Assembly: GCF_039654945.1 (NCBI RefSeq)
Contig: NW_027361751.1
Location: forward strand, 8,184,001-8,248,000
DNA: 64,000 nucleotides
Direction of reading: 5' to 3'
Source: Dendrobates tinctorius
Lineage: Eukaryota
Each line of letters opens with the position of its first letter. Positions within the stretch are counted from its first letter, which is position 1. A program made the position numbers and the translations under genes. Below, piece after piece: positions 9,967-60,252 of this stretch. Below the pieces are notes generated by a model, which did no database searches, was not told the origin of the DNA, and saw only the letters and a program-made list of their open reading frames with translations.

Positions 9967-11921
9967 CAATGGGGAATATAAGTATTTGATACACTGTCGA
10001 TTTTGCAAGTTTTCCCACCTACAAAGAATGGAGAGGTCTGTAATTTTTATCGTAGGTACACTTCACCTGTGAGAGACAGAATCTGAAAATAAAAAACAGT
10101 AAATCACAATTTACATAATCCACTAGTAGAAAACCCCTTCTTGAACGAAATTTTTACCCCCAATAACAAAAAAAAAAAAAAAAAAAACATACTCACCTCC
10201 AGTGCTGTGCTGGTGCCCTTTCCGCACTGTCAGGACACCCTCTCCACGGGGCTCTTGTGCGGTGTTGTCACACGTTACCCCAGTGCTCAATCAGCGCCGA
10301 CGTCCCTGTCCCTGCCTACGTACAGATTGAACATGAAGAGGAAGCCAGGGATCAGCTACAGCCCCGACTACCTCTTTATGTTCAATCCATACGTAGGCAG
10401 GGACAGTGATGTCTGCGCTGACTGAGCACTGGGGTCACATGTGACAACACCGCACAAGAGCCCCGTGTAAACAGAGTCCTGTCACCGCGGGAACGGCACC
10501 GACAAGAAGCGAGTATAGATTTTTTTATTTTATCAGAGGCAAAAATTTTGTTCAAGAAGGGGATGTTACAGTAGTGGACAACAGAAAAACAAAATATTTG
10601 GTACAGAGACCTTTGTTTTCAATTACAGAGGTCAGAAGTTTCCTGTAGTTTGCACACACCGCAGCTGGGATTTTGGCCTATTCGTCCATACAGATCTTAT
10701 CCAGATCTGTCAGGGTTCTGGGCTGTCACTAAGAAACATTGAGTTTCAGCTCCCTCCAAAGATTTACTATTGGGTTCAGTTGTGCAGACTGGCTAGGCCA
10801 CTCCGGGACCTTGAAATGCTTCTTGTGGAGCCACTCCTTAGTTGCCCTGGCTGTGTGTTTCAGGTCATTGTCATGCTGGAAGACAAAGCCACAACCCATC
10901 TTCAATGATCTTACTGAGTGAAGGAGGTTGTTGACCAAAATCTCGCAATACATGACCCCATCCATCCTCTCTTCAATACGATGCAGTTGCCTTGTCCCCT
11001 TTGCAGAAAAGCACCCCCATAGTATGATGTTTCCCCCACCATGCTTCACAGTTGGAACGGTAATCTTGGGGTTGTACTTATCCTTCTTCCTACAAACACG
11101 GCGAATGGTGTTGATACCAAAAATTTCTATTTTGGCCTCATCTGAACACATTACATTCTCCCATGCCTCATCCAGATGGTTTTTGGCGATCTTCAAACAG
11201 GTCAGGACGTGTGCTGGTGGGAGCAGGGTGACACTGTATGCCCTGCAGAATTTTAATCCATGACGGCGTAGTGTGGTACTAAAGGTAATGTTTGAGACTG
11301 TGGTCCCAGCTCTTTTCAGTCCATTGACCAGGTCTTCTCGTGTAATTCTGCGGTGATTCCTGACCTTTCTCAGAATCATCCTTACCCCACGATGCAAGAT
11401 CTTGCATGGAGCCCCAGACCTTAGAAGATTGACAGTCACCTTTGTGCTTCTTCCATTTTCTAATAATTGTGCCAACAGTTGTTGCCTTCTAACCAAGCTG
11501 CTTTCCTATTGTTCTGTATCCCATCCCAGCCTTGTGCAGGTTTACAATTTTGTCCTGGTATCGTTATACAGATCTTTGGCCTTGGCCATGGTGGAGAAGT
11601 TGGCGTGATTGATTGAGTGGACAGGCGTCTTTTATACAGGTAATGAGCGCAGAGTAGGAGGGCTTTTTAAGGAAAAACTAACAGGTCTGTGAGAGACAGA
11701 ATTCATGCTGATTGCTAGGTGATAACATAGTTATTTCATGCAATAAAATGCATATGAATTATGTAAAAATCATACAATGTGATTTTTTTGGTATTTATTT
11801 TTTACATTCTGTCTCTCACAGTGGAAGAGTACCGACAATAAAAATTACAGACCTCTCCATTCTTTGTAGGTAGGAAAACTTGCAAAATCGGCAGTGTATC
11901 CAATACTTATTTTCCCCACTG
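9967..11921 (-). mobile_element. Tc1-like transposon with decayed transposase (10729-11496) and a nested palindromic MITE (~10120-10580)
   Basis: Long TIRs flanked by TA; motifs [24 protein letters not shown]. Confidence 0.9.
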
Positions 11922-14921: not shown

Positions 14922-16189
14922 GTGAGCGCGGCGCTGTGTGTAGGCCGCCGCACTGTGTGCCTGTGCTGGGGGCGGTGTCTGCGGGCGTGCTGGGACTTGT
15001 GGTGCCACCTCTGGCAGCGTCGTCTTATCACATCTGTGACCTGGTGCCTCTCACACACAGCTCGCGCTTCTATTGACACCCTATAACCTGTGTGAGGAGT
15101 CAGGTTTCCTCTCCTTGTCTGTGAGTTTATTTCCTGGTTTCCATTTTGCCTCTGGGACAGAGAACCTAAAATCCCAGCAGCGGAATCTGTCACCTCCGTC
15201 TGTGCTGGGACCGTCCTCCGCGGATATAATTCAGCGCCGGAGTCTCCTCTTCAGATGTCAGAAATGGAGGTTAATCAGCGGCTCACCTTCTGGGGATTGG
15301 GTCGCCGGTCCCATATCTGGTTCCTGTGACAGGGGAGGGCGCAGCGATGGTCATAGGTAGAGGACACTTTCTGCTGACGCTGCTTTCTCATATATGGTAG
15401 TGTGGTAATAGGTCAGAACCTGGAAGACTTCCTCGTATTAAAGGGGTTCTCTGGTCATATGATATTGATGATCTCTCCATAGAAAGGCATTGATATGAGC
15501 TGATTGGTGGAGGAGCGCAGCGGACTGTTTAGTTGTGTCTAGAATCAAACCGCACAGATCTGTTCCATGTTAAGCAAGTGCTGCCGAGTGCAGAGAACAG
15601 CTGTTACCTGAGAAAACGGCTTACAATAGCTGATCGGTGGGGGCGCCGGACCCCTAAAGATCTGTTATTGATTAGATAACCTGCAAGTAGGTCATCTGCC
15701 CCTGCTGTTTGGCATAATAAGAGCGCTCCTCTTAGTGTCCCACATAATAATGTCCGCCACTGTGCTCCTTACATAGTAATAATGCCTTCTTTGTGCCCTC
15801 GCAAATGTCATAGAAACCAGTGCCCACGTTTTGACACAATACTGAGTGTCCTAAATGTGTCCACTTAATATTTAATAACGTGCACAGTCCCCCCAATGTA
15901 CAACTCCCCAAAACACAGTATGATGGGCCCACAGCTAGGCAAAAACAGTGTGATGGACTCCTTGTTACTACCCTGAGACCCGTCCCCCTCAAAACACAGT
16001 AACCCCCTGCACTATGTGACTGTCCCCCATTGCTTATAATGCCCCCACGAGTTTTAATTAAAATAAAAAGAAAAAACAGTGCATACCCACCTAATCCAGG
16101 ATTCTGACGACTCCACCAGCAAGACCTGGCGGGACCAATACGCTGTCATCGTGCTTGGTGCTGTGTGATGGCATTACAAATAACATAAT

Positions 16190-22217: not shown

Positions 22218-22354
22218 TTACCTGTACAGATATGGACTCTTCAGCAAGACTTGCTTGAAAAAAATATGCACATGCAGGACGGAGTCTTCTATATACTGTA
22301 GTGTTACTATTAAAACTTTACAACCCAGAATTTCACGTGTCATGTGTTTTCCAG

Positions 22355-22547
22355 GGCTTGCGGTTTAAAAAGGCTCACGTGACTCACCCTGAACTCAAAG
22401 CCACATTCTGCTTGCCTATCCTGGGTGTAAAGAAGAACCCATCCTCGCCACTCTACACAACTTTAGGTGTCATCACAAAGGGAACAGTCATTGAGGTGAA
22501 CGTCAGCGAGCTTGGTCTCGTCACTCAAGGAGGCAAAGTTATATGGG
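22355..22547 (+). CDS. NSA2: NSA2 exon 5
   Basis: 193 nt, [29 protein letters not shown]...GGKVIW. Confidence 0.97.
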
Positions 22548-22633
22548 GTAAGGCTTCAATTTCTAAACTGCAGATGATTGTCATTCATACTATGATACAG
22601 CCAATATATAATTGTTCATTTTTTTCCTTTTAG

Positions 22634-35177: not shown

Positions 35178-35711
35178 CTAAGCTGATAACTTGGTTCTTC
35201 GCTTGGGTGGTCCTTTGTAGGCCCTGGCCTTCCGGCGCAGACCACCTCTTCTGTCTACTATGGGGGCCTCTGTTTCCACTTCTTCTGAACTGCTCTCGCC
35301 ACCTCTCTCTCTATTTTTCTGGGCTGACTGATTGGTCTCCACGGACCCTTCAGACTGTTCTCCAGAAATGCTCCTCTGTCCGTCAGATTGTTGCTGCAAC
35401 ACTACGTCCTGAAGTTCAACCACAAGATGAGGACCTTGCCGGAGAAGAGGCAATGTTTCTGCAGAAACGTGAACTGTTGTTTGATTGATGTCCAGGGTGG
35501 ATGTTTTATCAGTGGTTGGACACGCATCTGTAGAATTACCCTCGGTGTAGCCAGGAAGACCATTATCTGTCGTGTCTTCACCTGGCAGACATGCTTCAGT
35601 TGATTTTGCTGCCATTTTCTCTTTGGGTTCCTCATCTTGTATTTCTGTTTCTTCTACTTCGGTTGTGATGTTTTCTTGTAAGGAAGTGTTCTGGTCGTCT
35701 GGCTTAAGGAC
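35178..35711 (-). CDS. FAM169A: FAM169A (soluble lamin-associated protein) terminal coding exon
   Basis: Acidic region ending EAPIVDRRGGLRRKARAYKGPPKRRTKLSA*, like the FAM169A C-terminus; TTTACAG acceptor; synteny with NSA2/GFM2. Confidence 0.88.
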   Translation of the reverse strand, partial: VLKPDDQNTSLQENITTEVEETEIQDEEPKEKMAAKSTEACLPGEDTTDNGLPGYTEGNSTDACPTTDKTSTLDINQTTVHVSAETLPLLRQGPHLVVELQDVVLQQQSDGQRSISGEQSEGSVETNQSAQKNRERGGESSSEEVETEAPIVDRRGGLRRKARAYKGPPKRRTKLSA

Positions 35712-37659: not shown

Positions 37660-40068
37660 CTGGGCACCCCGTACCGAGGACGGTCTGAGGCACCCCGTAC
37701 CGAGGACGGTCTGAGGCACCCCGTACCGAGGACGGTCTGGGACGCTTCGTACGGAGGACGGTCTGGATACAGAGGACAGTCTGGGGCACTTGACGGTCTG
37801 AGGCACTACGTACGGAGGATGGTTTGAGGCACTAACGGAAGACGGTCTAGGGCGCTCCATACAGAGGACAGTCTGAGGCACTATGTACGGAGGAAGGTCT
37901 GGGGCACGCCATACGGAGAACGGTCTGAAGCACTATGTACGGAGGATGGTCTGGGGCGCTTCGTACGGAGGACGGTCTGAGGCACCCCGTACGGAGGACG
38001 GTCTGAGGCACTCCGTACGGAGGACGGTCTGAGGCACTATGTACGGAGGACGGTCTGGGGCGCTTCGTATGGAGGACGGTCTGGGGCGCTCGACGGTCTG
38101 AGGCACTCCATACAGAGGACGATCTGGGGCGCTCCATACAGAGGATGGTCTGAGGCACTACGTACAGAGGATGGTTTGAGGCACTAACGGAAGACGGTCT
38201 GGCGTGCTCCATATAGAGGACAGTGAAAAATGAGGATGAATGAACTCATGGAGATCAACATCCAACACTGCCGAGACACCATCACATGTTTCTCAACGCA
38301 GTGATTCTAGAGCACTGCCCCCATCCCTTATGGGAATTATGCAAAAACATGCAAAACACAAGCCGCGGAGACACCATCACATGTTTCTCAACGCAAGCAA
38401 TGACTAGCCAGGTCTTTCCCCGGGAAGGAACAACCACGGGAAGGGCAGTCTCCAATGAAGGAAACCACCTATGCCAAAACATAGGCACTCCATACAGAGG
38501 ACGGTCTGAGGCACTACATACGAAGGACAGTTTGAGGCACTACTTACGGAGGACGGTCTGGGGTGCTCCATACAGAGGACAGCCTGAGGCACTATGTACG
38601 AAGGACGGTCTGGGGCGCTCCATACAGAGGACAGCCTGAGGCACTATGTACGGAGGACGGTCTGGGGCGCTCCATACAGAGGACGTTCTAAGGCACTATG
38701 TACGGAGGACAGTTTGAGGCACTACTTACGGAGGACGGTCTGGGGTGCTCCATACAGAGGACAGCCTGAGGCACTATGTACGAAGGACGGTCTGGGGTGC
38801 TCCATACAGAGGACAGCCTGAGGCACTATGTACGAAGGACGGTCTGGGGCGCTCCATACAGAGGACAGCCTGAGGCACTATGTATGGAGGACGGTCTGGG
38901 GCGCTCCATACAGAGGACGTTCTAAGGCACTATGTACGGAGGACAGTTTCAGGCACTACTTACGGAGGACGGTCTGGTGCGCTCCATACAGAGAACGGTC
39001 TGAGGCACTACATATGGAGGATGGTTTGAGGCACTACTTACGGAGGATGGTCTGGTGCGCTCCATAAAGAGAACGGTCTGAGGCACTACATATGGAGGAT
39101 GGTTTGAGGCACTACTTACGGAGGATGGTCTGGGGTGCTCCATACAGAGGACGTTCTGAGGCACTATGTACAGAGGACGGTCTGAGGCACTATGTACGAT
39201 GGATGGTTTCAGGCACTACTTACGGAGGACGGTTTGGGGCGCTCCATACAGAGAACGGTCTGAGTCACTACATATGGAGGACGGTCTGGGGCACTACATA
39301 CGGAGGATGGACTGGGACGCTCTGTACGTAGTGCCCCAGACCGTCCTCAGTATGGAGTGACCCAGACCGTCCTCCGTACATATTGCCTCAGACCGTCCTC
39401 CATACATAGTGCATCAGACTATCCATACATAGTGCCTCAGACCGTCCACTGTACGGAGGACGGTCTGAGGCAGTCTGTACGAAGGACATCTGAGTCATTC
39501 CGTACGGAGGATGGTCTGGGGCACTCCATACAGAGGACAGTCTGAGGCACTATGTATGGAGGATAGTCTGATGCACTCCTTACAGAAAGGACGGTCTTTG
39601 GCAATATGTACAGAGGACGGTCTGAGGCACTCCATACAGAGGACGGTCTGAGGCACTCCATACAGAAAGGACGGTCTGAGGCACTCCATACAGAAAGGAC
39701 GGTCTTTGGCACTATGTATGGAGGACGGTCTGAGGCACTATGTATGGAGGACGGTCTGAGGCACTATGTATGGAGGACGGTCTGAGGCACTATGTATGGA
39801 GGACGGTCTGAGGCACTATGTATGGAGGACGGTCTGAGGCACTATGTATGGAGGACGGTCTGAGGCACTATGTATGGAGGACGGTCTGAGGCACTATGTA
39901 TGGAGGACGGTCTGAGGCACTATGTATGGAGGACGGTCTGAGGCACTATATATGGAGGACGGTCTGAGGCACTATGTATGGAGGACGGTCTGAGGCACTA
40001 TGTATGGAGGACGGTCTGAGGCACTATGTATGGAGGACGGTCTGAGGCGCTCCGCACCAAGGACGGTT
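37660..40068. repeat. ~2.4-kb minisatellite of 23-27-bp units (GGAGGACGGTCTGAGGCACTATGTAT)
   Basis: Near-perfect 26-bp units 39710-40046, variant units elsewhere; foreign insert 38224-38482 and inverted block ~39325-39449. Confidence 0.95.
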
Positions 40069-40153
40069 TCTATACGTGGACAGAACACACAGCGTTTGCT
40101 AACATATTACATATCTTTATTTTTAGCTGGATACAATCATATCACCATTGTCT

Positions 40154-40813
40154 CTAGGACAGCGGGGGGCACTGGGGGCTGAGGAAGTTCCTGGGCTGGA
40201 TCATGCCGCCTTGCTTGCCCGCCTCGGCCTGCAGGGCGCTGAGCACTTCACTGATGGTGCTGTCCGCTATGTCTCCATCGATTTGGGCCAGGTAGCTGTA
40301 GAGAAATACAAATGTCTGCTGTGGGATGCGGGCGGCGCCCCCCTCGGGATCCTCGGTCAGTATCTCGCAGGCGTACTTCAGGGCGGTGGTGATGCTGCCC
40401 CCCAGGGCGCTGCAGGCGAGAGCCAGGAACTTCATCCACTCCACCTGTGTGCCAGGCGGGTCCAGCTCCAGGAGGCCGAGCAGCTGCGCCTGCGGTAAGC
40501 ACACGGCCCGCCACCTCTGCTCCAGCTCCTCCACCGGCACCAGCACCCGGCCGGACAGCTGTCTGTGCAGCACCCGCAGCAGCCCCGGGCTCAGGCCGCT
40601 GTCATTCCTCTGCGTGGCCACCGGCAGCTCCACCCGATCCGTCACCGGCAGCGGCTCCCCCCTGGACAGGCTGTGGAAGTACGCCGCCGACCACTGCAGC
40701 ACGTCGTGAGGCTGCGTCCGGATCGCCGCCTTGGTGAACTGCTTCAGCAGGTCCGGGAGCTCGGGCGGGATGTGGATCTGCTGAGCGCAGAACATGGGCT
40801 CCGGGAGGGGCAT
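40154..40813 (-). CDS. ROPN1L: Ropporin-1-like protein (RIIa dimerisation/docking domain), intronless, nested in FAM169A last intron
   Basis: GCCGCCATG start; MPLPEPMFCAQQIHIPPELPDLLKQFTKAAIRTQPHDVLQWSAAYF...; 219 aa uninterrupted; AATAAA at 40116-40121. Confidence 0.92.
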   Translation of the reverse strand: MPLPEPMFCAQQIHIPPELPDLLKQFTKAAIRTQPHDVLQWSAAYFHSLSRGEPLPVTDRVELPVATQRNDSGLSPGLLRVLHRQLSGRVLVPVEELEQRWRAVCLPQAQLLGLLELDPPGTQVEWMKFLALACSALGGSITTALKYACEILTEDPEGGAARIPQQTFVFLYSYLAQIDGDIADSTISEVLSALQAEAGKQGGMIQPRNFLSPQCPPLS

Positions 40814-40891
40814 GGCGGCAGGTAGCGGGGACACCGAGAGACACGGAGCACCGGCACAGCCAGCAATGGCGGGCAGGGACTGTAGCGTCCC

Positions 40892-40904
40892 GTTACCAGG
40901 CAAC
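40892..40904. promoter_or_regulatory. RFX X-box upstream of ROPN1L
   Basis: GTTACCAGGCAAC, 79 bp upstream of the ATG; second degenerate site CTGCCAAGGCAGC adjacent. Confidence 0.75.
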
Positions 40905-41139
40905 AACTGCCAAGGCAGCGAGGATACGTTACTGCGTCGGGTCACGTAGTCGCTTTAGCGGCACCACCTGGTGCATAGCGGAACTGCAGCTAATTACACA
41001 GAAAATCGCGTGACTAGGAGAGGCTATAAAACAACGTGTAGGCTGTATACAGGTCACTGCACTGTATACCCGACACACAGGAACATGCCTGTTATACACA
41101 CACACATATACCTCTGTTATATACAGATAAACATTCCTA

Positions 41140-41367
41140 TGTATGGCAGGGGGGAACAACGTAAAGATCATGGTTGACAGATGCAGCCTCAAGGCTGATA
41201 AGAAATGGTTGTGGGGTTCGGATCAGGGTGTGAATGATGTAGTATGGCTGTCTACCAGAAATATTAAACTGAATATTCCTTCCTGGAAATTAGATCCTAG
41301 GTTCATTGGTCCTTACAAGGCGATCGCCATAATTAACCCTGTGGCCTTTTGTTCTGAGCTTCTTCTA
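41140..41367 (+). mobile_element. Gypsy (chromovirus) integrase C-terminal remnant, first part
   Basis: VWLSTRNIKL..PSWKLDPRFIGPY..INPVAF (GPY/F motif); continues at ~49005. Confidence 0.8.
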
Positions 41368-42299
41368 AGGGTTCATGTACACATTCAGTATTTTACCTCA
41401 GTATCTGTAAGCCAAAAGCAGGAGAGGAACAATCAGGAAAAGTATAAGGGCTCATACTCACTTGAGAGAGACTCACTCACTTGCGAGAGACTTGCATGAA
41501 AACCTGGCACTGCCGCCGGCACACGGACCGGCTGCATAGAAATGCATGTAGCCTCACGCTCCGGTCCGAGTGCCGGCGGCAGTGCCAGGTTTTCATGCAA
41601 GTCTCTCGCAAGTGAGTGAGTCTCTCTCAAGTGAGTATGAGCCCTTATACTTTTCCTCTGACTGTTCCACTCCTGCTTTTGGCTTACAGATACTGAGGTA
41701 AAAAAAACTCACCAAAAACTCAATGTGTGCACATGGCCTTAGGCTGGAGTCACACTAAACGTATGAAAAATCGGTCCGAGTCTCCCTGCCGAGAGTCACA
41801 CGAGTGTCATGCGAGTACAATGCGATTTTTCACACCTAGCATCAGATTAACATCCGAATACAGTGTGATTGCTATCCGACTGCAATGTAATTTTAACATG
41901 AGCTTTTACATAGATCAATTCTCTATGTGATTTACACGTCATTTTCAAAGGAAATATTTGTCAAAATACACTCACACACACAATAGAATAAAAGCCGGCA
42001 ATTCATGTGCCACATACAGTAAAATCACAGTGACAGGTTAGAATAGAATAGATATATACACACAGATATATAGATGTCAGTGACACACACATGTATAATC
42101 ACAGCAGGAGCCGACTGGATACAAGAGATTGATTACATACAGTAAATACAAATAAAATAGGTATATAGATAGTCTGTGACAAACACAATTACTGCAGTGT
42201 GTGCAGCTTACTGTACATGTATTTAATCCCTTAACGATCGCTGATACGCCTTGTAACGGTGGCAGTTAAGGGTACTTAACCCTCAGCACCGCTTTTTAA

Positions 42300-45200
42300 C
42301 CCCTTACCTACAATTGACGTAATATTCCGTCCATGTGACCATGGACCTAATTACCATGGACGGAATATTACGTCATCGCGATCAGCGGCGCCCACGTGGT
42401 GAGCGCCGCTGATCGCGGCCGAGTGTCAGCTAATTATCATAGCTGACACCCGGCACAATGTGTCAGGGGCGGTCACGGACCGCCCCCGACACGTTAACCC
42501 CTTGCACACCGCGATCAAACGCGATCGCGGTGTACCGGGGGTTAAAGGGAAGCATCGGCAGGGAGGGGGCTCCCTCCGTGCTTCCCTGAGCCCCCCACGG
42601 CAGCGCAATGTGCAGCGCTGCTGCGGGGGGCTCTTTCCCTACAGGCCCCCGGATCCAAGATGGCGACGGGGGCCTGCAGGGAGCTGACTTCCTCACTGCC
42701 TGCAAAGCGCAGGCATGAGGAAGTCTGCAGCAGTGCCTGTGACAGATCGCTGATCTGTCACAGTGATCTGTGATGTGACAGATCAGCGATCTGTCACAGG
42801 ACAGTGATGTCCCACCTGGGACAAGGTAATAAAGTAAAAAAAAAAAAAAAAAAAAAAGTGTTAAAAATAATTAAAAAAAAATCGCTAAATAAATCAGTAA
42901 AAAAAAAAAAATATATTCCCCAATAAATCCATTTTTTCAAAATAAAAAAAACCAAAAACAATAAAAGTACACATATTTGGTATCGCCGCGTCCGTAATGA
43001 CCTGCCCTATAAAACTGTCCCATTAGTTAACCCCTTTAGCGAACCCCTTAAAAAATAAAAATAAAAAACGAAGCAAAAAATAATGATTTATTATCATACC
43101 ACCGAACAAAAAGTGCAATAACGCGCGATCAAAAAGACGCATATAAATATGCATGGTACCGCTGAAAACATCATCTTGTCCCGCAAAAAACGATCCACCA
43201 TACAGCATCATCCGCAAAAAAATAAAAAAGTTATAGCTCGCAGAATAAAGCGATACAAAAATAATTATTTTTTATATAAAATAGTTTTCATTGCAAAAAA
43301 CCGACAAAACATAAAAAAAGACCTAAATGAGGTATCGCTGTAACCGTACTGACCCGAAGAATAAAAACGCGTTATCAATTTTACCGCACGCGGAATGGTG
43401 TAAACGCACCCCCCAAAAGAAATTCATGAAACGCTGGTTTTTGTTCATTCTGCGTCCCAAAAATCGGAATAAAAAGCGATCAAAAAATGTCACGTGCCCG
43501 AAAATGGTACCAATAAAAACGTCAACTCGTCCCGCAAAAAATAAGACCTCACATGACTCGGTGGGTCAAAATACGGAAAAATTATAGCTCACAATATGTG
43601 GTGATGCAAAAACTATTTTTACAATAAAAAGCGTCTTTTAGCGTGCGACAGCCGCCAAACATAAAAACCGCCATAAATCGTAAATCAAACCCCCCGTTAT
43701 CACCCCCTTAGTTAGGGAAAAATAATAAAACTAAAAGAAAATGTATTTATTTCCATTTTCCCGCTAGGGTTAGGGCTAGGGTTAGGGCTAGGGCTCAGAT
43801 TAGGGTTAGGGGTGTGTTGAGGTTCGGGTTGGAGTTATAATTGGGGGTTTCCACTGTTTGGGCACATCAGGTGCTCTCCAAAGGCAACATGGCGTCTGAT
43901 CTCAATTCCAGCCAATTCTGCGTTGAAAAAGTCAAATGGTGCTCCTTCCCTTCCAAGCTCTGCCATGTGCCCAAACAGTGTTTTACCCCCACATGTAGGG
44001 TATCAGCCTACTCAGGACAAATTACAAAACAACTTTTGGGGTCCAATTTCTCCTGTTACCCTTAGGAAAATAAAAAATTGGGGGCAAAAATATAATTTTG
44101 CGGAAAAAAATGTTTTTTTTATTTTCACGCCCAGGCGTTATAAACTTCTGTGAAGCACTTGGGGGTTCAAAGTGCTCTCCACACATCTAGATAAGCTCCG
44201 TGGGGGGTCTAGTTTCCAAAATGGGGTCACTTGTGGGGAGTTTCAATAGTTTAGGTACATCAGGGGCTCTCCAAACGCACATGACACCCGCAGACCAATC
44301 CATGAAAGTCTGCATTCCAAAACGTCACTACTTCCCTTCCGAGCCCCGACGTGTGCCCATACAGTAGTTTTCTCCCACATATGAGGTATCAGCGTACTCA
44401 GGACAAATTGGACAACAACTTTTGGGGTCCAATTTCTCCTGTTACCCTTGGGAAAATAAAAAAAATGGGGACTAAAAGATGATGTTTGTTGAAAAAATAC
44501 GATATTTTTATTTTCACGCCCGGTCGTTATAAACTTCTGTGAAGCACTGGGGGGTTCAAAGTGCTCACCACACATCTAGATAAGTTCATTAGGGGGTCTA
44601 GTTTCCAAAATGGGGTCACTTGTGGGGGGTTTCCACTGTTTAGGTACATCAGGGGCTCTCCAAACGCAACATGACACCCGCAGACCATTCCATCAAAGTC
44701 TGCATTCCAAAACGTCACTACTTCCCTTCCGAGCCCCGACGTGTGCCCATACAGTAGTTTTCTCCCACATATGAGGTATCAGCGTACTCAGGACAAATTG
44801 GACAACAACTTTTGGGGTCCAATTTCTCCTGTTACCCTTGGGAAAATAAAAAAATGGGGACTAAAAGATCATGTTTGTGGAAAAAATACGATTTTTTTAT
44901 TTTCACGCACGGACGTTATAAACTTCTGTGAAGCACTGGGGGGGTTCAAAGTGCTCACCACACATCTAGATAAGTTCATTAGGGGGTCTAGTTTCCAAAA
45001 TGGGGTCACTTGTGGGGGGTTTCCACTGTTTAGGTACATCAGGGGCTCTCCAAACGCAACATGACACCCGCAGACCATTCCATCAAAGTCTGCATTCCAA
45101 AACGTCACTACTTCCCTTCCGAGCCCCGACGTGTGCCCATACAGTAGTTTTCTCCCACATATGAGGTATCAGCGTACTCAGGACAAATTGGACAACAACT

Positions 45201-47805
45201 TTTGGGGTCCAATTTCTCCTGTTACCCTTAGGAAAATAAAAAAATGGGGACTAAAAGATCATGTTTGTGGAAAAAATACGATTTTTTTATTTTCACGCAC
45301 GGACGTTATAAACTTCTGTGAAGCACTGGGGGGGGTTCAAAGTGCTCACCACACATCTAGATAAGTTCATTAGGGGGTCTAGTTTCCAAAATGGGGTCAC
45401 TTGTGGGGGGTTTCCACTGTTTAGGTACATCAGGGGCTCTCCAAACGCAACATGACACCCGCAGACCATTCCATCAAAGTCTGCATTCCAAAACGTCACT
45501 ACTTCCCTTCCGAGCCCCGACGTGTGCCCATACAGTAGTTTTCTCCCACATATGAGGTATCAGCGTACTCAGGACAAATTGGACAACAACTTTTGGGGTC
45601 CAATTTCTCCTGTTACCCTTGGGAAAATAAAAAAATGGGGACTAAAAGATCATGTTTGTGGAAAAAATACGATTTTTTTATTTTCACGCCCGGACGTTAT
45701 AAACTTCAGTGAAGCACTGGGGGGTTCAAAGTGCTCACCACACATCTAGATAAGTTCCTTGGGGGGTCTAGTTTCCAAAATGGTGTCATTTGTGGGGGGT
45801 TTCTACTGTTTTGGTACATCAGGGGCTCTCCAAACGCAACATGACACCCGCAGACCATTCCATCAAAGTCTGCATTCCAAAACGTCACTACTTCCCTTCC
45901 GAGCCCCGACGTGTGCCCATACAGTAGTTTTCTCCCACATATGAGGTATCAGCGTACTCAGGACAAATTGGACAACAACTTTTGGGGTCCAATTTCTCCT
46001 GTTACCCTTGGGAAAATAAAAAAATGGGGACTAAAAGATCATGTTTGTGGAAAAAATACGATTTTTTTATTTTCACGCCCGGACGTTATAAACTTCAGTG
46101 AAGCACTGGGGGGTTCAAAGTGCTCACCACACATCTAGATAAGTTCCTTGGGGGGTCTAGTTTCCAAAATGGTGTCATTTGTGGGGGGTTTCTACTGTTT
46201 TGGTACATCAGGGGCTTTCCTAACGCGACATGGTGTCCGATCTCAATTCCAGCCAAAAACGTCAAATGGCGCTGCTTCCCTTCCGAGCTCTGCCATACGC
46301 CCAAATAGTGGTTTACCCCCACATGTGGGGTATCAGCGTACTCAGGATAAATTGCACAATATCTTTTAGGGTCCTGTTACTTTTGGAAAAATAAGAATTG
46401 AGGGTGAAAAGATCATTTTTGTGGAAAAAATATGATTTTTTAATTGTACTGCTGTACGTTATAAACTTCTGTGAAGCCCTTGGGGGTTCAAAGTTCTCAC
46501 CACACATCTAGATAAGTTCCTTGGGGGGTATAGATTCCAAAATGGTGTCATTTGTGGGGGGTTTTCACTGTTTTGGTACATCAGGGGTTTTCCAATCGCG
46601 ACATGGTGTCCGATCTCAATTCTAGCCAAAAACGTCAAATGGCGCTGCTTCCCTTCCGAGCTCTGCTATGCGCCCAAATAGTCATTTACACCCACATATG
46701 GGGTATCAGCGTACTCAGGACAAATTGCACAATAACTTTTAGGGTCCTGTTACCCTTGGAAAAATAAAAATTGGGGGTGAAAAGATCATTTTTGTGGAAA
46801 AAATATGATTTTTTAATTGTACCGCTGTACGTTATAAACTTCTGTGAAGCCCTTGTGGGTTCAAAGTTCTCACCACATATTTAGATAAGTTCCTTGGGGG
46901 GTCTAGTTTCCAAAATGGGGTCACTTGGGGGGGTTTCCACTGTTTAGGTACATCAGGGGCTCGCCAAACGTGACATGGCGTCCGATCTGAATTCCAGCCA
47001 ATTTTGCATTGAAAAAGTCAAACGGCGCTCCTTCCATTCTGAGCTCTGCCATGCGCCGAAACAGTGGTTCCCCCCCACATATCAGGTATCAGCGTACTCA
47101 GGACAAATTGCACAATAAGTCTTGCAGTCCAATTTCTCCTGTTACCCTTGGTAAAATAAAGAAAATTGAACCTGAAGTATTTTTTTTGTGAAAAAAAGTT
47201 AAATGTTCATTTTTTTTTAATATTCAAAAAATTCCTGTGACGCACCTAAAGGGTTAATAAACTTCTTGAATGTGGTTTTAAGCACCTTAAGGGGTGCAGT
47301 TTTTAGAATGATGTCACTTTTGGGTATTTTCTATCATATAGACCCCTCAAAGTGGCTTCAAATGTGAAGTGGTCCCTAAAAATAAAATGGTGTTGCAAAA
47401 ATGAGAAATCGCTGGTCAATTTTTAACCCTTATAACTTCCTGACAAAAAAAAATTTTGGTTCCAAAACTGTGCTGATGTAAAGTAAACATGTGGGAAATG
47501 TTATGTATTAAGTTTTTTTTGTGTGCCGTATCGCTGTGATTTAAGGGCATAAAAATTCAAAGTTGGAAAATTGCGAAATTTTCAAAATTTTCACCAAATT
47601 TCCGTTTTTTTCACAAATAAACGCAAGTTATTTGAATGCAATTTTACCACTAACATGAAGTACAATATGTCACGAGAAAACAATGTCAGAATCACCGGGA
47701 TCCATGAAAGCGTTCCAGAGTTATGACCTCATAAAGGTACAGTGGTCAGAATTGTAAAAATTGGCCCGGTAGTTAACGTGCAAACCACCCTTGGTAGTGA
47801 AGGGG
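42300..47805. mobile_element. Non-autonomous piggyBac-type element (5.5 kb) nested in a related outer element (~42227-48865)
   Basis: TTAA|CCCCTTACCTAC...GTAGTGAAGGGG|TTAA; no transposase seen. Confidence 0.8.
43840..47150. repeat. ~390-bp tandem array, about 8.5 copies, inside the piggyBac-type element
   Basis: Same motif at 44351, 44741, 45131, 45522, 45911 (spacing 389-391). Confidence 0.95.
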
Positions 47806-53743: not shown

Positions 53744-53947
53744 CTGGTCTGGAAAGGAGTTTTCAATGGATTTCTCCAAGTCCATGTTAACTGAAACCAG
53801 AGTGGTTAGAGATTTTCCATCACCGTCTCCTGTGTCCCTGTTGGATTCTGTATCAGAAGCGTCTTTTCCTTCTTCATGTGCATCTACCAATTGAGGCTGA
53901 AAGACTTCCTTTGCGATATCCCCATTCACCGCCTCCAATTCAAGCTC
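53744..53947 (-). CDS. FAM169A: FAM169A penultimate coding exon
   Basis: 204 nt, ELELEAVNGDIAKEV...ENSFPDQ; TTTTAG / GTAAGT boundaries, phase 0-0. Confidence 0.82.
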
Positions 53948-60074: not shown

Positions 60075-60252
60075 CTGTTTGCTCTCACTCCTTTCCTCTT
60101 TCTGAGGATCCAGGTTGTCACATAACATGTGCTCCACGGGTCTTGCTGAGATCTGCTCCTGGAGCTTGGTCATGTCGCTCTCATCCTTGTCTTCTGCAAG
60201 CTGCTGGATGAGCTCTTTGAAGGTCTCCACTATCTGTTCTTTAGACACCATT
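60075..60252 (-). CDS. FAM169A: FAM169A coding exon
   Basis: 178 nt, MVSKEQIVETFKELIQQLAEDKDESD...RSESKQ; TTACAG / GTACGG boundaries; phases fit both neighbours. Confidence 0.72.

What the first reader, a model, noticed from the sequence alone, without database searches (positions are those of the whole stretch)
40100..40960. Intact intronless ROPN1L nested in the FAM169A last intron, with its own ciliary promoter
Seen: uninterrupted 219-aa ORF, perfect Kozak, polyA signal, CpG-rich body and a palindromic RFX X-box 79 bp upstream, on the same strand as the host and surrounded by decayed repeats. Established: mammalian ROPN1L is multi-exon, unlinked to FAM169A, and acts as an AKAP-binding radial-spoke/sperm protein; RFX factors drive ciliary genes. 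Inference: a functional retrogene that may have replaced the parent gene in this lineage. Its polyA site could also truncate FAM169A transcripts.
Basis: partly seen in the sequence, partly recalled or inferred. Interest (0 to 1): 0.7.

Follow-up and report, generated by a model that had tools for sequence, protein, structure and literature searches.

The report
Old frog ROPN1L retrogene, promoter included
This poison-frog gene for a sperm-tail and cilium protein is an intact copy made from an mRNA; about half of all frog lineages share it, seemingly in place of the original five-exon gene, and it brought its own cilia-gene switch along in its leader sequence.

Summary
On the minus strand, 40813..40154 is an uninterrupted 219-codon ROPN1L gene (E 1e-82 to ROPN1L chains in solved axonemes). 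An AATAAA follows 33 nt after the stop. A consensus RFX X-box lies 78 nt before the ATG. GC is 0.67.

The gene sits in the last intron of FAM169A, on the same strand, tail-to-tail with NSA2.

It is not special to this species. The same intronless, FAM169A-nested gene is in Phyllobates, Bufo, Mixophyes and Pseudophryne. Xenopus, bullfrog, Gastrophryne and axolotl keep a multi-exon gene spanning 31-218 kb that is not nested. The copy therefore arose once, in the stem of hyloid frogs in the broad sense.

dN/dS among the copies is 0.10-0.22. None of eleven hyloid proteomes shows a second ROPN1L, so it is a probable "orphan" retrogene.

New here: the promoter was not acquired. A 29-nt double X-box block is homologous to exon 1 (5'UTR) of the bullfrog parental mRNA and to the Xenopus promoter region. 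It was evidently carried on the retrotransposed mRNA.

A 991-nt contig from a close relative at depth 68 indicates transcription starting near 40959.

Not tested: parental relics, the tissue of expression, RFX binding, and truncation of the host transcript.

The scan had noted other retrogenes in this genome (CEP43, UHRF1, PPIL1, ODAD3), but not this one.

The parts
40154..40813 (-). ROPN1L coding sequence: 219 codons plus stop, with no intron
   Evidence: E 8.5e-83 and 8.1e-82 to ROPN1L chains 9fqr_IX and 8j07_Q, collinear over residues 1-210/214. RIIa domain at residues 19-49; 92% identical to Phyllobates ROPN1L.
40116..40121 (-). AATAAA polyadenylation signal, 33 nt after the stop
   Evidence: An AATAAA lies 33-77 nt after the stop in all five retrogene loci. 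Its use was not shown: the relative's contig runs past it.
40814..40959 (-). 5' leader and promoter-proximal region. It corresponds to the 5'UTR of the retrotransposed mRNA. The transcript contig ends at 40959.
   Evidence: the X1 contig covers 40077-40959, with no cover at 40982-41365; the block conserved with Bufo starts near 40949. CpG o/e 1.01.
40892..40904 (-). X-box 2, GTTGCCTGGTAAC, a consensus RFX site
   Evidence: the only match in the window; identical in Phyllobates, Bufo and a further hyloid contig (L015).
40906..40919 (-). X-box 1 (degenerate). Together with X-box 2 it forms the 29-nt block 40892-40920 that is homologous to the parental exon 1 / promoter.
   Evidence: A weight matrix built from retrocopies only scores 24.0 bits at X. 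tropicalis L002:8406 and 21.6 bits at nt 9-19 of the bullfrog mRNAs, both above all shuffles.
40925..40931 (-). CRE-like TAACGT (TGACGT/TGACGG in other species and in the Xenopus promoter), just upstream of the X-boxes
   Evidence: alignment. Its function was not tested.
40296..40376 (-). Candidate 81-nt in-frame internal intron ('exitron') with GT..polypyrimidine-AG. It matches the 27-aa gap of the annotated Ranitomeya isoform X2.
   Evidence: No spliced reads were seen.
35178..35711 (-). Last coding exon of the host gene FAM169A (SLAP75)
   Evidence: hit to 'soluble lamin-associated protein of 75 kDa', E 3.6e-13; conserved with the end of the host gene in Phyllobates and Mixophyes; acceptor site located.
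53744..53947 (-). Penultimate FAM169A exon (204 nt, ends in phase 0, in frame with the last exon)
   Evidence: No other conserved coding block lies between it and the last exon except ROPN1L.
60075..60252 (-). Earlier FAM169A exon (178 nt)
37663..40067 (.). 26-bp minisatellite arrays starting about 50 nt beyond the polyA signal
   Evidence: The same repeat follows the gene in Phyllobates.
41143..41499 (+). Decayed LTR-retrotransposon integrase fragment upstream of the gene
   Evidence: PF24626 SH3_Tf2-1, E 3.6e-8.

Best explanation
This is an ancient, functional ROPN1L retrogene.

Origin (inferred from distribution): in the common ancestor of hyloid frogs in the broad sense (Nobleobatrachia plus the Australian myobatrachids), after the split from ranoid frogs, a spliced, essentially full-length ROPN1L mRNA was reverse-transcribed and inserted into the last intron of FAM169A in the sense orientation.

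Promoter (sequence homology shown, activity inferred): the parental transcript started upstream of its promoter-proximal RFX sites. The copy therefore arrived with a CRE-like element and a tandem pair of X-boxes in its 5' leader. These elements now lie about 40-65 nt downstream of the copy's own transcript start. They most likely let RFX factors switch the gene on in cells with motile cilia and in spermatids, as Rfx2 does for the parent in Xenopus.

Protein (shown by similarity, function inferred): it has an RIIa-type docking domain and is the radial-spoke / AKAP-binding ropporin-1-like protein. It stayed under purifying selection.

Parent (probable): the multi-exon parent was then lost, so this copy is probably the only ROPN1L of these frogs.
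For: Identity: (E 1e-82 to ROPN1L in axoneme structures).

Retrocopy:
- Xenopus and bullfrog genes have 5 coding exons, with introns after CDS nt 131, 255, 417 and 593, plus a 5'UTR intron. All are absent here.
- Gene spans are 31 kb in Xenopus, 64 kb in bullfrog, 39 kb in Gastrophryne and 218 kb in axolotl, and none overlaps a host gene.
- The gene is 660 bp and nested in a 677-686-aa gene on the same strand in Phyllobates, Bufo, Mixophyes and Pseudophryne.

Host is FAM169A and the intron is the last one: (NSA2 lies tail-to-tail).

Single origin: shared insertion site, and a starred clade of 11 hyloid proteins.

Selection: dN/dS 0.10-0.22 by NG86, with dS up to 1.5, and all copies are exactly 219 codons.

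Inherited promoter: a weight matrix built only from the retrocopies finds the parental site in the X. tropicalis locus (24.0 bits, next best 12.1, best of 100 shuffles 18.0). That site is 1.6 kb upstream of the ATG exon. The matrix also finds the site inside four independent bullfrog mRNA contigs (21.6 bits, best of 500 shuffles 13.6). Mixophyes and bullfrog share 19 of 21 nt.

Expression: one 991-nt contig at depth 68 in a 75-million-letter run of a relative about 96% identical. It ends at 40959 with no upstream cover and no joint. The window's own species gives low-depth contigs.

Parent is an Rfx2-controlled gene in Xenopus: PMC3889689.

No second ROPN1L in any of 11 hyloid species among the 120 best hits.
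Against: - No poly(A) remnant or target-site duplication could be found. This is expected after more than 100 million years, but the hallmark is missing.
- The sequencing runs are not on record as RNA. That they are RNA is inferred from depth against run size, and the tissue is unknown.
- The relative's contig extends at least 39 nt, probably about 130 nt, past the AATAAA. Use of that signal is therefore not shown.
- Loss of the parent rests on annotated proteomes only. This assembly could not be searched for a parental gene or relic.
- Taken singly, X-box homology is significant only for Mixophyes against bullfrog. For the Nobleobatrachia it rests on the multiple alignment and the weight-matrix scan.
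- RFX binding is inferred from the motif and from Xenopus literature.
Confidence: 0.85

Rival explanations
1. It is a functional retrogene, but the multi-exon parent still exists in hyloid frogs, unannotated or divergent. The copy is then an extra paralogue and not a replacement.
For: No whole-genome search of this or any hyloid assembly was possible with the tools at hand. Annotation pipelines can miss genes in very large, repeat-rich frog genomes.
Against: Eleven hyloid species each show exactly one ROPN1L among the 120 best hits, and non-hyloid frogs also show one. An intact parent at 65% identity or more would have ranked inside that list. The copies keep the exact parental length and low dN/dS, as expected of a sole copy.
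Confidence: 0.15
2. The X-boxes were gained after insertion, de novo or from the host intron, and resemble the parental ones only because both bind RFX.
For: RFX sites are constrained palindromes, so some similarity is expected. In pairwise tests the dendrobatid and Bufo sequences are not individually significant against the bullfrog 5'UTR.
Against: The similarity covers a 29-nt tandem arrangement with identical spacing, a CRE-like element 5' of it and a GACGC 3' of it. The two myobatrachid copies share TGGAAATAGT(T/C)GCA with the bullfrog mRNA. The distance to the ATG (78-165 nt) fits the spliced mRNA (about 100 nt), not the parental genome, where the distance is 1.6 kb in Xenopus and over 10 kb in bullfrog. 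The retrocopy-only matrix picks the parental site out of 51 kb.
Confidence: 0.1
3. It is not a retrocopy. The ancestral gene sat in FAM169A and lost its introns in place, or the nested arrangement is ancestral and was lost elsewhere.
For: No poly(A) tail or target-site duplication was found.
Against: In Xenopus, bullfrog and Gastrophryne no host gene overlaps the 31-64 kb ROPN1L gene. All five introns, including the 5'UTR intron, are missing at once.
Confidence: 0.03
4. It is a transcribed processed pseudogene, or a by-product of FAM169A pre-mRNA, without protein function.
For: It lies in the sense orientation in a host intron, so some reads could be host pre-mRNA. Low-depth contigs of the window species also cover 40951-41358.
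Against: The open frame is exactly 219 codons in at least five sequenced loci separated by dS up to 1.5, with dN/dS 0.1-0.2. The high-depth contig stops at 40959 with zero cover upstream. The upstream cover in the other runs falls on a retrotransposon fragment.
Confidence: 0.02

Closest known systems
Orphan retrogenes (Ciomborowska et al. 2013, PMC3548309; Carelli et al. 2016, PMC4772013)
   Same: An intronless mRNA-derived copy under purifying selection. The intron-bearing parent is present in outgroups and apparently absent in the lineage that holds the copy. The copy is expected to keep the parental expression.
   Different: The published sets are mammalian or human. This case is in frogs, is shared by a clade of thousands of species, and concerns a radial-spoke/sperm gene. 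Absence of the parent is shown here only at the level of annotated proteomes.
Retrocopies that carry their parent's promoter (Okamura & Nakai 2008, PMC2386082; about 3% of expressed retrocopies in Carelli et al. 2016)
   Same: Promoter-proximal sequence lay downstream of a parental start site. It was transcribed, reverse-transcribed, and sits in front of the copy.
   Different: Here the carried element is a defined, tissue-programme motif (tandem RFX X-boxes), not a generic CpG core promoter. It is still recognisable after a divergence with saturated synonymous sites.
Vertebrate ROPN1L (ropporin-1-like; radial spoke protein RSP11 homologue)
   Same: About 60% identical and collinear over the whole length with the mammalian protein in solved axoneme structures. 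It has the N-terminal RIIa docking domain. The Xenopus orthologue is among the genes controlled by Rfx2 (PMC3889689).
   Different: One exon instead of five coding exons plus a 5'UTR exon. It sits at a new locus inside FAM169A. GC3 is 0.89 against 0.31 in the parental genes.

Membership tests
ROPN1L protein family | Full-length collinear similarity to ROPN1L, not to ROPN1 or other RIIa proteins | tested here: met
   E 8.5e-83 and 8.1e-82 over residues 1-210/214; best named hits are all ropporin-1-like; it falls inside the frog ROPN1L tree following the species tree.
ROPN1L protein family | N-terminal RIIa dimerisation/docking domain | tested here: inconclusive
   PF02197 at residues 19-49, E 1.9e-4, 21.5 bits, just under the 22.4-bit cut-off. 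Most orthologues also lack a precomputed Pfam hit. The residues are invariant across frogs.
Processed retrogene | Lacks all introns of the parental gene at once | tested here: met
   four CDS introns in Xenopus and bullfrog; one 5'UTR intron. All are absent in the window.
Processed retrogene | Lies at a locus different from the parent | tested here: met
   Nested in FAM169A in five hyloid genomes (and 28 for the window). Not nested in Xenopus, bullfrog or Gastrophryne.
Processed retrogene | Poly(A) tract and target-site duplications at the borders | tested here: not met
   none recognisable. The direct repeats around the Mixophyes copy are two copies of a fold-back element, not duplications of the target. 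This is expected for an insertion this old and does not exclude retroposition.
Orphan retrogene | Purifying selection on the copy | tested here: met
   pairwise dN/dS 0.10-0.22 (NG86) and 0.03-0.11 (ML) among four retrocopies.
Orphan retrogene | No functional parent in the same genome | tested here: inconclusive
   one ROPN1L per hyloid species in the protein collection. No tool allowed a search of the frog assemblies for parental exons.
Orphan retrogene | The copy is expressed | tested here: inconclusive
   a contig at depth 68 in a 75-million-letter run of a close relative, and low-depth contigs in the window species. Library type and tissue are not on record.
RFX (X-box) regulated cilia gene | Match to GTNRCC(N0-3)RGYAAC close to the transcript start, conserved between species | tested here: met
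   a unique match in 64 kb, identical in four Nobleobatrachian sequences, with weaker variants in the two myobatrachids.
RFX (X-box) regulated cilia gene | RFX occupancy and dependence of expression on RFX | not testable with these tools
   The only support is from literature on the Xenopus parent (PMC3889689).
Promoter-carrying retrocopy | Sequence 5' of the copy's ATG is homologous to transcribed parental promoter sequence | tested here: met

The most novel reading that the evidence does not exclude
Cilia genes whose RFX X-boxes lie just downstream of the transcript start are 'portable': their mRNA carries enough of the switch to rebuild correct expression wherever it lands. If so, this would help explain why early neobatrachian frogs replaced several cilium/centriole genes by retrocopies. 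ROPN1L is shown here. CEP43 and ODAD3 were noted elsewhere in this genome by the scan but were not checked by me. ROPN1L would then be the first case where the carried element is identified base by base.
Probability: 0.2. Interest if true: 0.7.

Novelty: new member of a known kind. Interest (0 to 1): 0.5.

Why it matters
It is a clean natural experiment. A motile-cilium/sperm gene was moved as a bare mRNA copy into another gene's intron, and has apparently served as the only copy in a clade holding roughly half of all frog species.

The regulatory element that came with it (CRE-like site plus tandem X-boxes, about 50 nt) is small and defined, and it is still alignable to the parental promoter. 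That gives a directly testable minimal ciliary promoter. It also gives a concrete example of how retrocopies can inherit tissue-specific rather than housekeeping expression.

The shift of GC3 from 0.31 to 0.6-0.9 after intron loss is also a strong single-gene illustration of the link between intronless genes and GC-rich synonymous sites.

For annotation, the practical point is that hyloid ROPN1L is not a synteny-conserved orthologue of the Xenopus or human gene.

Tried and rejected
- Protein-atlas search of the host's last exon gave no usable hit, and Pfam found nothing on it. The word search then found a named SLAP75 fragment.
- The first attempt to link the retrocopy leader to the parent used a bullfrog mRNA contig that started with sequencing adapter. 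The apparent similarity to the end of exon 1 was dropped once longer contigs were fetched.
- Bullfrog exon 1 is not within 10 kb upstream of the ATG exon, so the bullfrog genomic promoter could not be read.
- The 5'UTR of a second non-hyloid transcript (L016/L017, species unknown) has no clear X-box block. Its best score is 4.3 bits. That contig may simply start downstream of the block.
- A strict X-box pattern finds nothing in the Xenopus, bullfrog or Gastrophryne loci. Only the weight matrix found the degenerate Xenopus site.
- The Ranitomeya isoform could not be located on a contig.
- No poly(A) remnant or target-site duplication was found.
- Literature searches for ROPN1L with 'retrogene' or 'intronless', and for frog retrogenes, found no prior description.

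Full report
**What is at the coordinates**

The feature is on the minus strand.
- An ATG at 40813 opens a 219-codon frame that ends with a stop at 40156-40154.
- The protein aligns end to end with ropporin-1-like protein chains from solved axoneme structures: 9fqr_IX at E 8.5e-83 and 8j07_Q at E 8.1e-82. It aligns more weakly with Chlamydomonas radial spoke protein 11.
- Pfam places an RIIa docking domain at residues 19-49, just below the curated cut-off (21.5 against 22.4 bits).
- The start context is GCCGCC-ATG-C.
- An AATAAA lies at 40121-40116.
- The stretch 40150-40960 has GC 0.67 and CpG observed/expected 0.71.
- The 13-mer GTTGCCTGGTAAC at 40904-40892 is the only match to the published X-box consensus GTNRCC(N0-3)RGYAAC in the whole window. 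Shuffles give 0.79 matches per 64 kb on both strands, about 0.002 for a given 150 bp.

Only 'perfect Kozak' is slightly generous.

**Host gene and surroundings**

- The gene lies between two exons of a minus-strand gene. One is a 204-nt exon at 53947-53744. The other is a terminal exon at 35711-35178. Both are flanked by proper splice signals and are in frame with each other.
- The terminal exon matches a protein fragment named 'soluble lamin-associated protein of 75 kDa', which is FAM169A (E 3.6e-13).
- An NSA2 exon (Ribosomal_S8e, E 1.2e-22) lies on the plus strand at 22301-22633. From my own knowledge this matches the GFM2-NSA2-FAM169A order of other vertebrates.
- Translated comparison with the Mixophyes locus finds no other conserved coding block between the penultimate and last host exons except ROPN1L. 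The gene therefore sits in the 18-kb last intron, in the sense orientation.
- It is flanked by a 26-bp minisatellite (37663-40067) and a decayed LTR-retrotransposon integrase fragment (41143-41499).

**It is a retrocopy, and an old one**

The closest proteins are from poison frogs: Phyllobates at 92%, and a Ranitomeya isoform at 95% over its aligned part.

| Species | Gene structure | Nested in a host gene? |
|---|---|---|
| X. tropicalis | multi-exon, 31 kb | no overlapping gene |
| Bullfrog (Aquarana) | multi-exon, 64 kb | no overlapping gene |
| Gastrophryne (microhylid) | multi-exon, 39 kb | no overlapping gene |
| Axolotl | multi-exon, 218 kb | no overlapping gene listed |
| Phyllobates | 660 bp, intronless | yes, 678-aa gene, same strand |
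| Bufo bufo | 660 bp, intronless | yes, 677-aa gene, same strand |
| Mixophyes | 660 bp, intronless | yes, 686-aa gene, same strand |
| Pseudophryne | 660 bp, intronless | yes, 684-aa gene, same strand |

- In Xenopus and bullfrog the coding sequence is split into five exons, with introns after CDS nt 131, 255, 417 and 593.
- A further intron lies in the 5'UTR, directly before the ATG exon.
- The shared insertion site shows one origin. So does a well-supported clade of all eleven hyloid proteins, including the two myobatrachids (95/93 support).
- That origin falls after the split from ranoid frogs and before the split of the Australian myobatrachids from the other hyloids. From published frog time trees this is of the order of 100-150 million years. 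That figure is my own knowledge and was not tested. Synonymous sites between the window and Mixophyes are near saturation (dS 1.5), which fits.

**It is functional**

- All five retrogene loci keep exactly 219 codons.
- Pairwise dN/dS among four of them is 0.10-0.22 by Nei-Gojobori and lower by maximum likelihood. This is similar to bullfrog against Xenopus for the parental gene, at 0.08-0.09.
- An AATAAA is kept 33-77 nt after the stop in all five.
- In the laid runs, a close relative (about 96% identical) gives a single 991-nt contig at word depth 68 in a run of only 75 million letters. It covers 40077-40959, ends exactly at 40959, shows no joint to any upstream exon, and has no cover over 40982-41365.
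- Runs of the window's own species give low-depth contigs over 40141-41036.
- A single-copy locus of a multi-gigabase genome cannot reach that depth in so small a DNA run, so I read these as transcripts. The library type is not on record and the tissue is unknown.
- The contig runs past the AATAAA, so use of that signal is not demonstrated.

**The parent is probably gone**

Among the 120 best of 726 hits, every hyloid species appears once and every non-hyloid frog once. The hyloids are Phyllobates, Anomaloglossus, Rhinoderma, Bufo, Dendropsophus, Eleutherodactylus, Engystomops, Leptodactylus, Mixophyes and Pseudophryne, plus the window. An intact parental copy would have ranked well inside that list. 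This is annotation-level evidence only. No tool allowed a search of the frog assemblies for a parental gene or its relics.

**The promoter came with the mRNA**

- Upstream of the ATG, the hyloid copies share a conserved block. It begins near 40949 in the window, which is where similarity with Bufo starts and about where the transcript contig ends.
- The core of the block is a tandem pair of X-boxes (40919-40906 and 40904-40892), preceded by a CRE-like TAACGT/TGACGT.
- Four bullfrog mRNA contigs from different runs extend 137-146 nt upstream of the ATG. At nt 9-47 they contain the sequence GTTACTATGGAAATAGTTGCATGGAGAC. Mixophyes and Pseudophryne retrocopies read GTTGTCTTGGAAATAGT(T/C)GCA... at the aligned place. 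Mixophyes against bullfrog scores 32 in a local alignment, against a maximum of 25 in 1000 shuffles.
- A weight matrix built from the six retrocopy sequences alone was then scanned over the parental loci. In the 51-kb X. tropicalis locus the best site scores 24.0 bits at L002:8406. The next best scores 12.1, and the best of 100 shuffles 18.0. The site is on the gene's strand, 1.6 kb upstream of the ATG exon. It sits in a stretch with a CCAAT box, a TGACGT and a plausible splice donor about 50 nt further on. In the bullfrog mRNAs the best site scores 21.6 bits, against 13.6 for the best of 500 shuffles.
- In the retrocopies the X-boxes lie 78-165 nt from the ATG. That matches the spliced mRNA (about 100 nt) and not the parental genome (1.6 kb in Xenopus, over 10 kb in bullfrog).

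The simplest account is that the parental transcript began upstream of its own RFX sites, so the retrocopy landed with them in its leader. [quoted passage not shown] In the Nobleobatrachia the second box has moved to a full consensus match (GTTGCCTGGTAAC), identical in four species. In the two myobatrachids it stays closer to the parental, weaker form.

**How it most likely works**

| Step | Status |
|---|---|
| Insertion of a full-length spliced mRNA copy | shown |
| Purifying selection | shown |
| Transcription starting near the 5' border of the inserted sequence | shown |
| Homology of the leader to the parental promoter/exon 1 | shown |
| RFX factors bind the carried X-boxes and drive expression in motile-ciliated cells and spermatids | inferred |
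| The protein takes the place of ROPN1L in the radial spoke / AKAP-binding scaffold | inferred |
| The parent decayed once the copy reproduced its expression | inferred |
| The copy's polyA site affects FAM169A | untested |

On the last point, the host's last exon is conserved from Mixophyes to the window, so the host still reaches it.

**Comparison with what is known**

Parent-replacing ('orphan') retrogenes are a described class (PMC3548309; ten families in mammals in PMC4772013). Retrocopies that carry parental promoter sequence are also described. That holds for more than half of 29 functional human retrogenes in PMC2386082, and for about 3% of expressed retrocopies in PMC4772013. This case belongs to both. 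I found no paper describing it. It is therefore a new member of a known kind. Two features stand out: the carried element is a defined tissue-programme motif, and the clade that depends on the copy is large. The scan has noted other intact retrogenes in this same genome (CEP43, UHRF1, PPIL1, ODAD3). I did not check those.

**Limits**

The bullfrog genomic promoter, more parental 5'UTRs, the tissue of expression and the fate of the parental locus remain open.

Noticed in passing
window 40154-40813; L001, L003, L004 at 10001-10657; L011, L002: Synonymous-site GC rose sharply after intron loss. GC3 is 0.89 (window), 0.86 (Phyllobates), 0.74 (Bufo) and 0.61 (Mixophyes), against 0.32 and 0.31 in the bullfrog and Xenopus parental genes. 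The flanking intron is only 0.44-0.53 GC. This fits the reported link between intronless genes or retrogenes and GC-rich synonymous sites (PMC7181179, seen, abstract only). Biased gene conversion is not excluded.
   Followed up: partly
window 40296-40376 (-): An 81-nt in-frame stretch inside the coding sequence has a GT donor and a polypyrimidine-AG acceptor. Removing it gives exactly the 27-residue gap of the annotated Ranitomeya variabilis 'isoform X2' (192 aa). It lies inside what was parental exon 4, so it would be a newly arisen optional intron. No spliced reads were seen.
   Followed up: partly
L004:9461-9629 and L004:10865-11050 (Mixophyes): Two copies (92% alike) of a fold-back element of about 170-190 nt flank the Mixophyes retrogene. 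Each carries a perfect palindromic X-box-type motif (GTTGCCTATAGCAAC). In this species the inherited X-box is weak. Whether these supply RFX sites is unknown.
   Followed up: partly
window 37663-40067; L001:10750-14107 and 15680-15938: Arrays of a 26-bp minisatellite start about 50 nt beyond the retrogene's polyA signal. They total about 2.1 kb: roughly 540 bp at 37663-38202 and 61 copies at 38483-40067. The same repeat follows the gene in Phyllobates but not in Bufo or Mixophyes.
   Followed up: no
window 43945-46977: A tandem array of a 389-bp unit, 7.9 copies, 93% matches, lies in the same FAM169A intron. Translated similarity to repeated sequence in the Bufo locus (L003 about 18.2-20.6 kb) suggests a shared repeat family.
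   Followed up: no
window 10729-11496 (-): A 255-aa ORF with Tc3-type transposase HTH and DDE_3 domains: a Tc1/mariner transposase remnant.
   Followed up: partly
window 41385-41436: A roughly 50-nt stretch is covered at depth 100-1900 in all four laid runs, with many unlike continuations. It is part of a very abundant, transcribed or high-copy repeat.
   Followed up: no
window 22301-22633 (+): An NSA2 exon (Ribosomal_S8e domain) lies tail-to-tail with FAM169A.
   Followed up: partly
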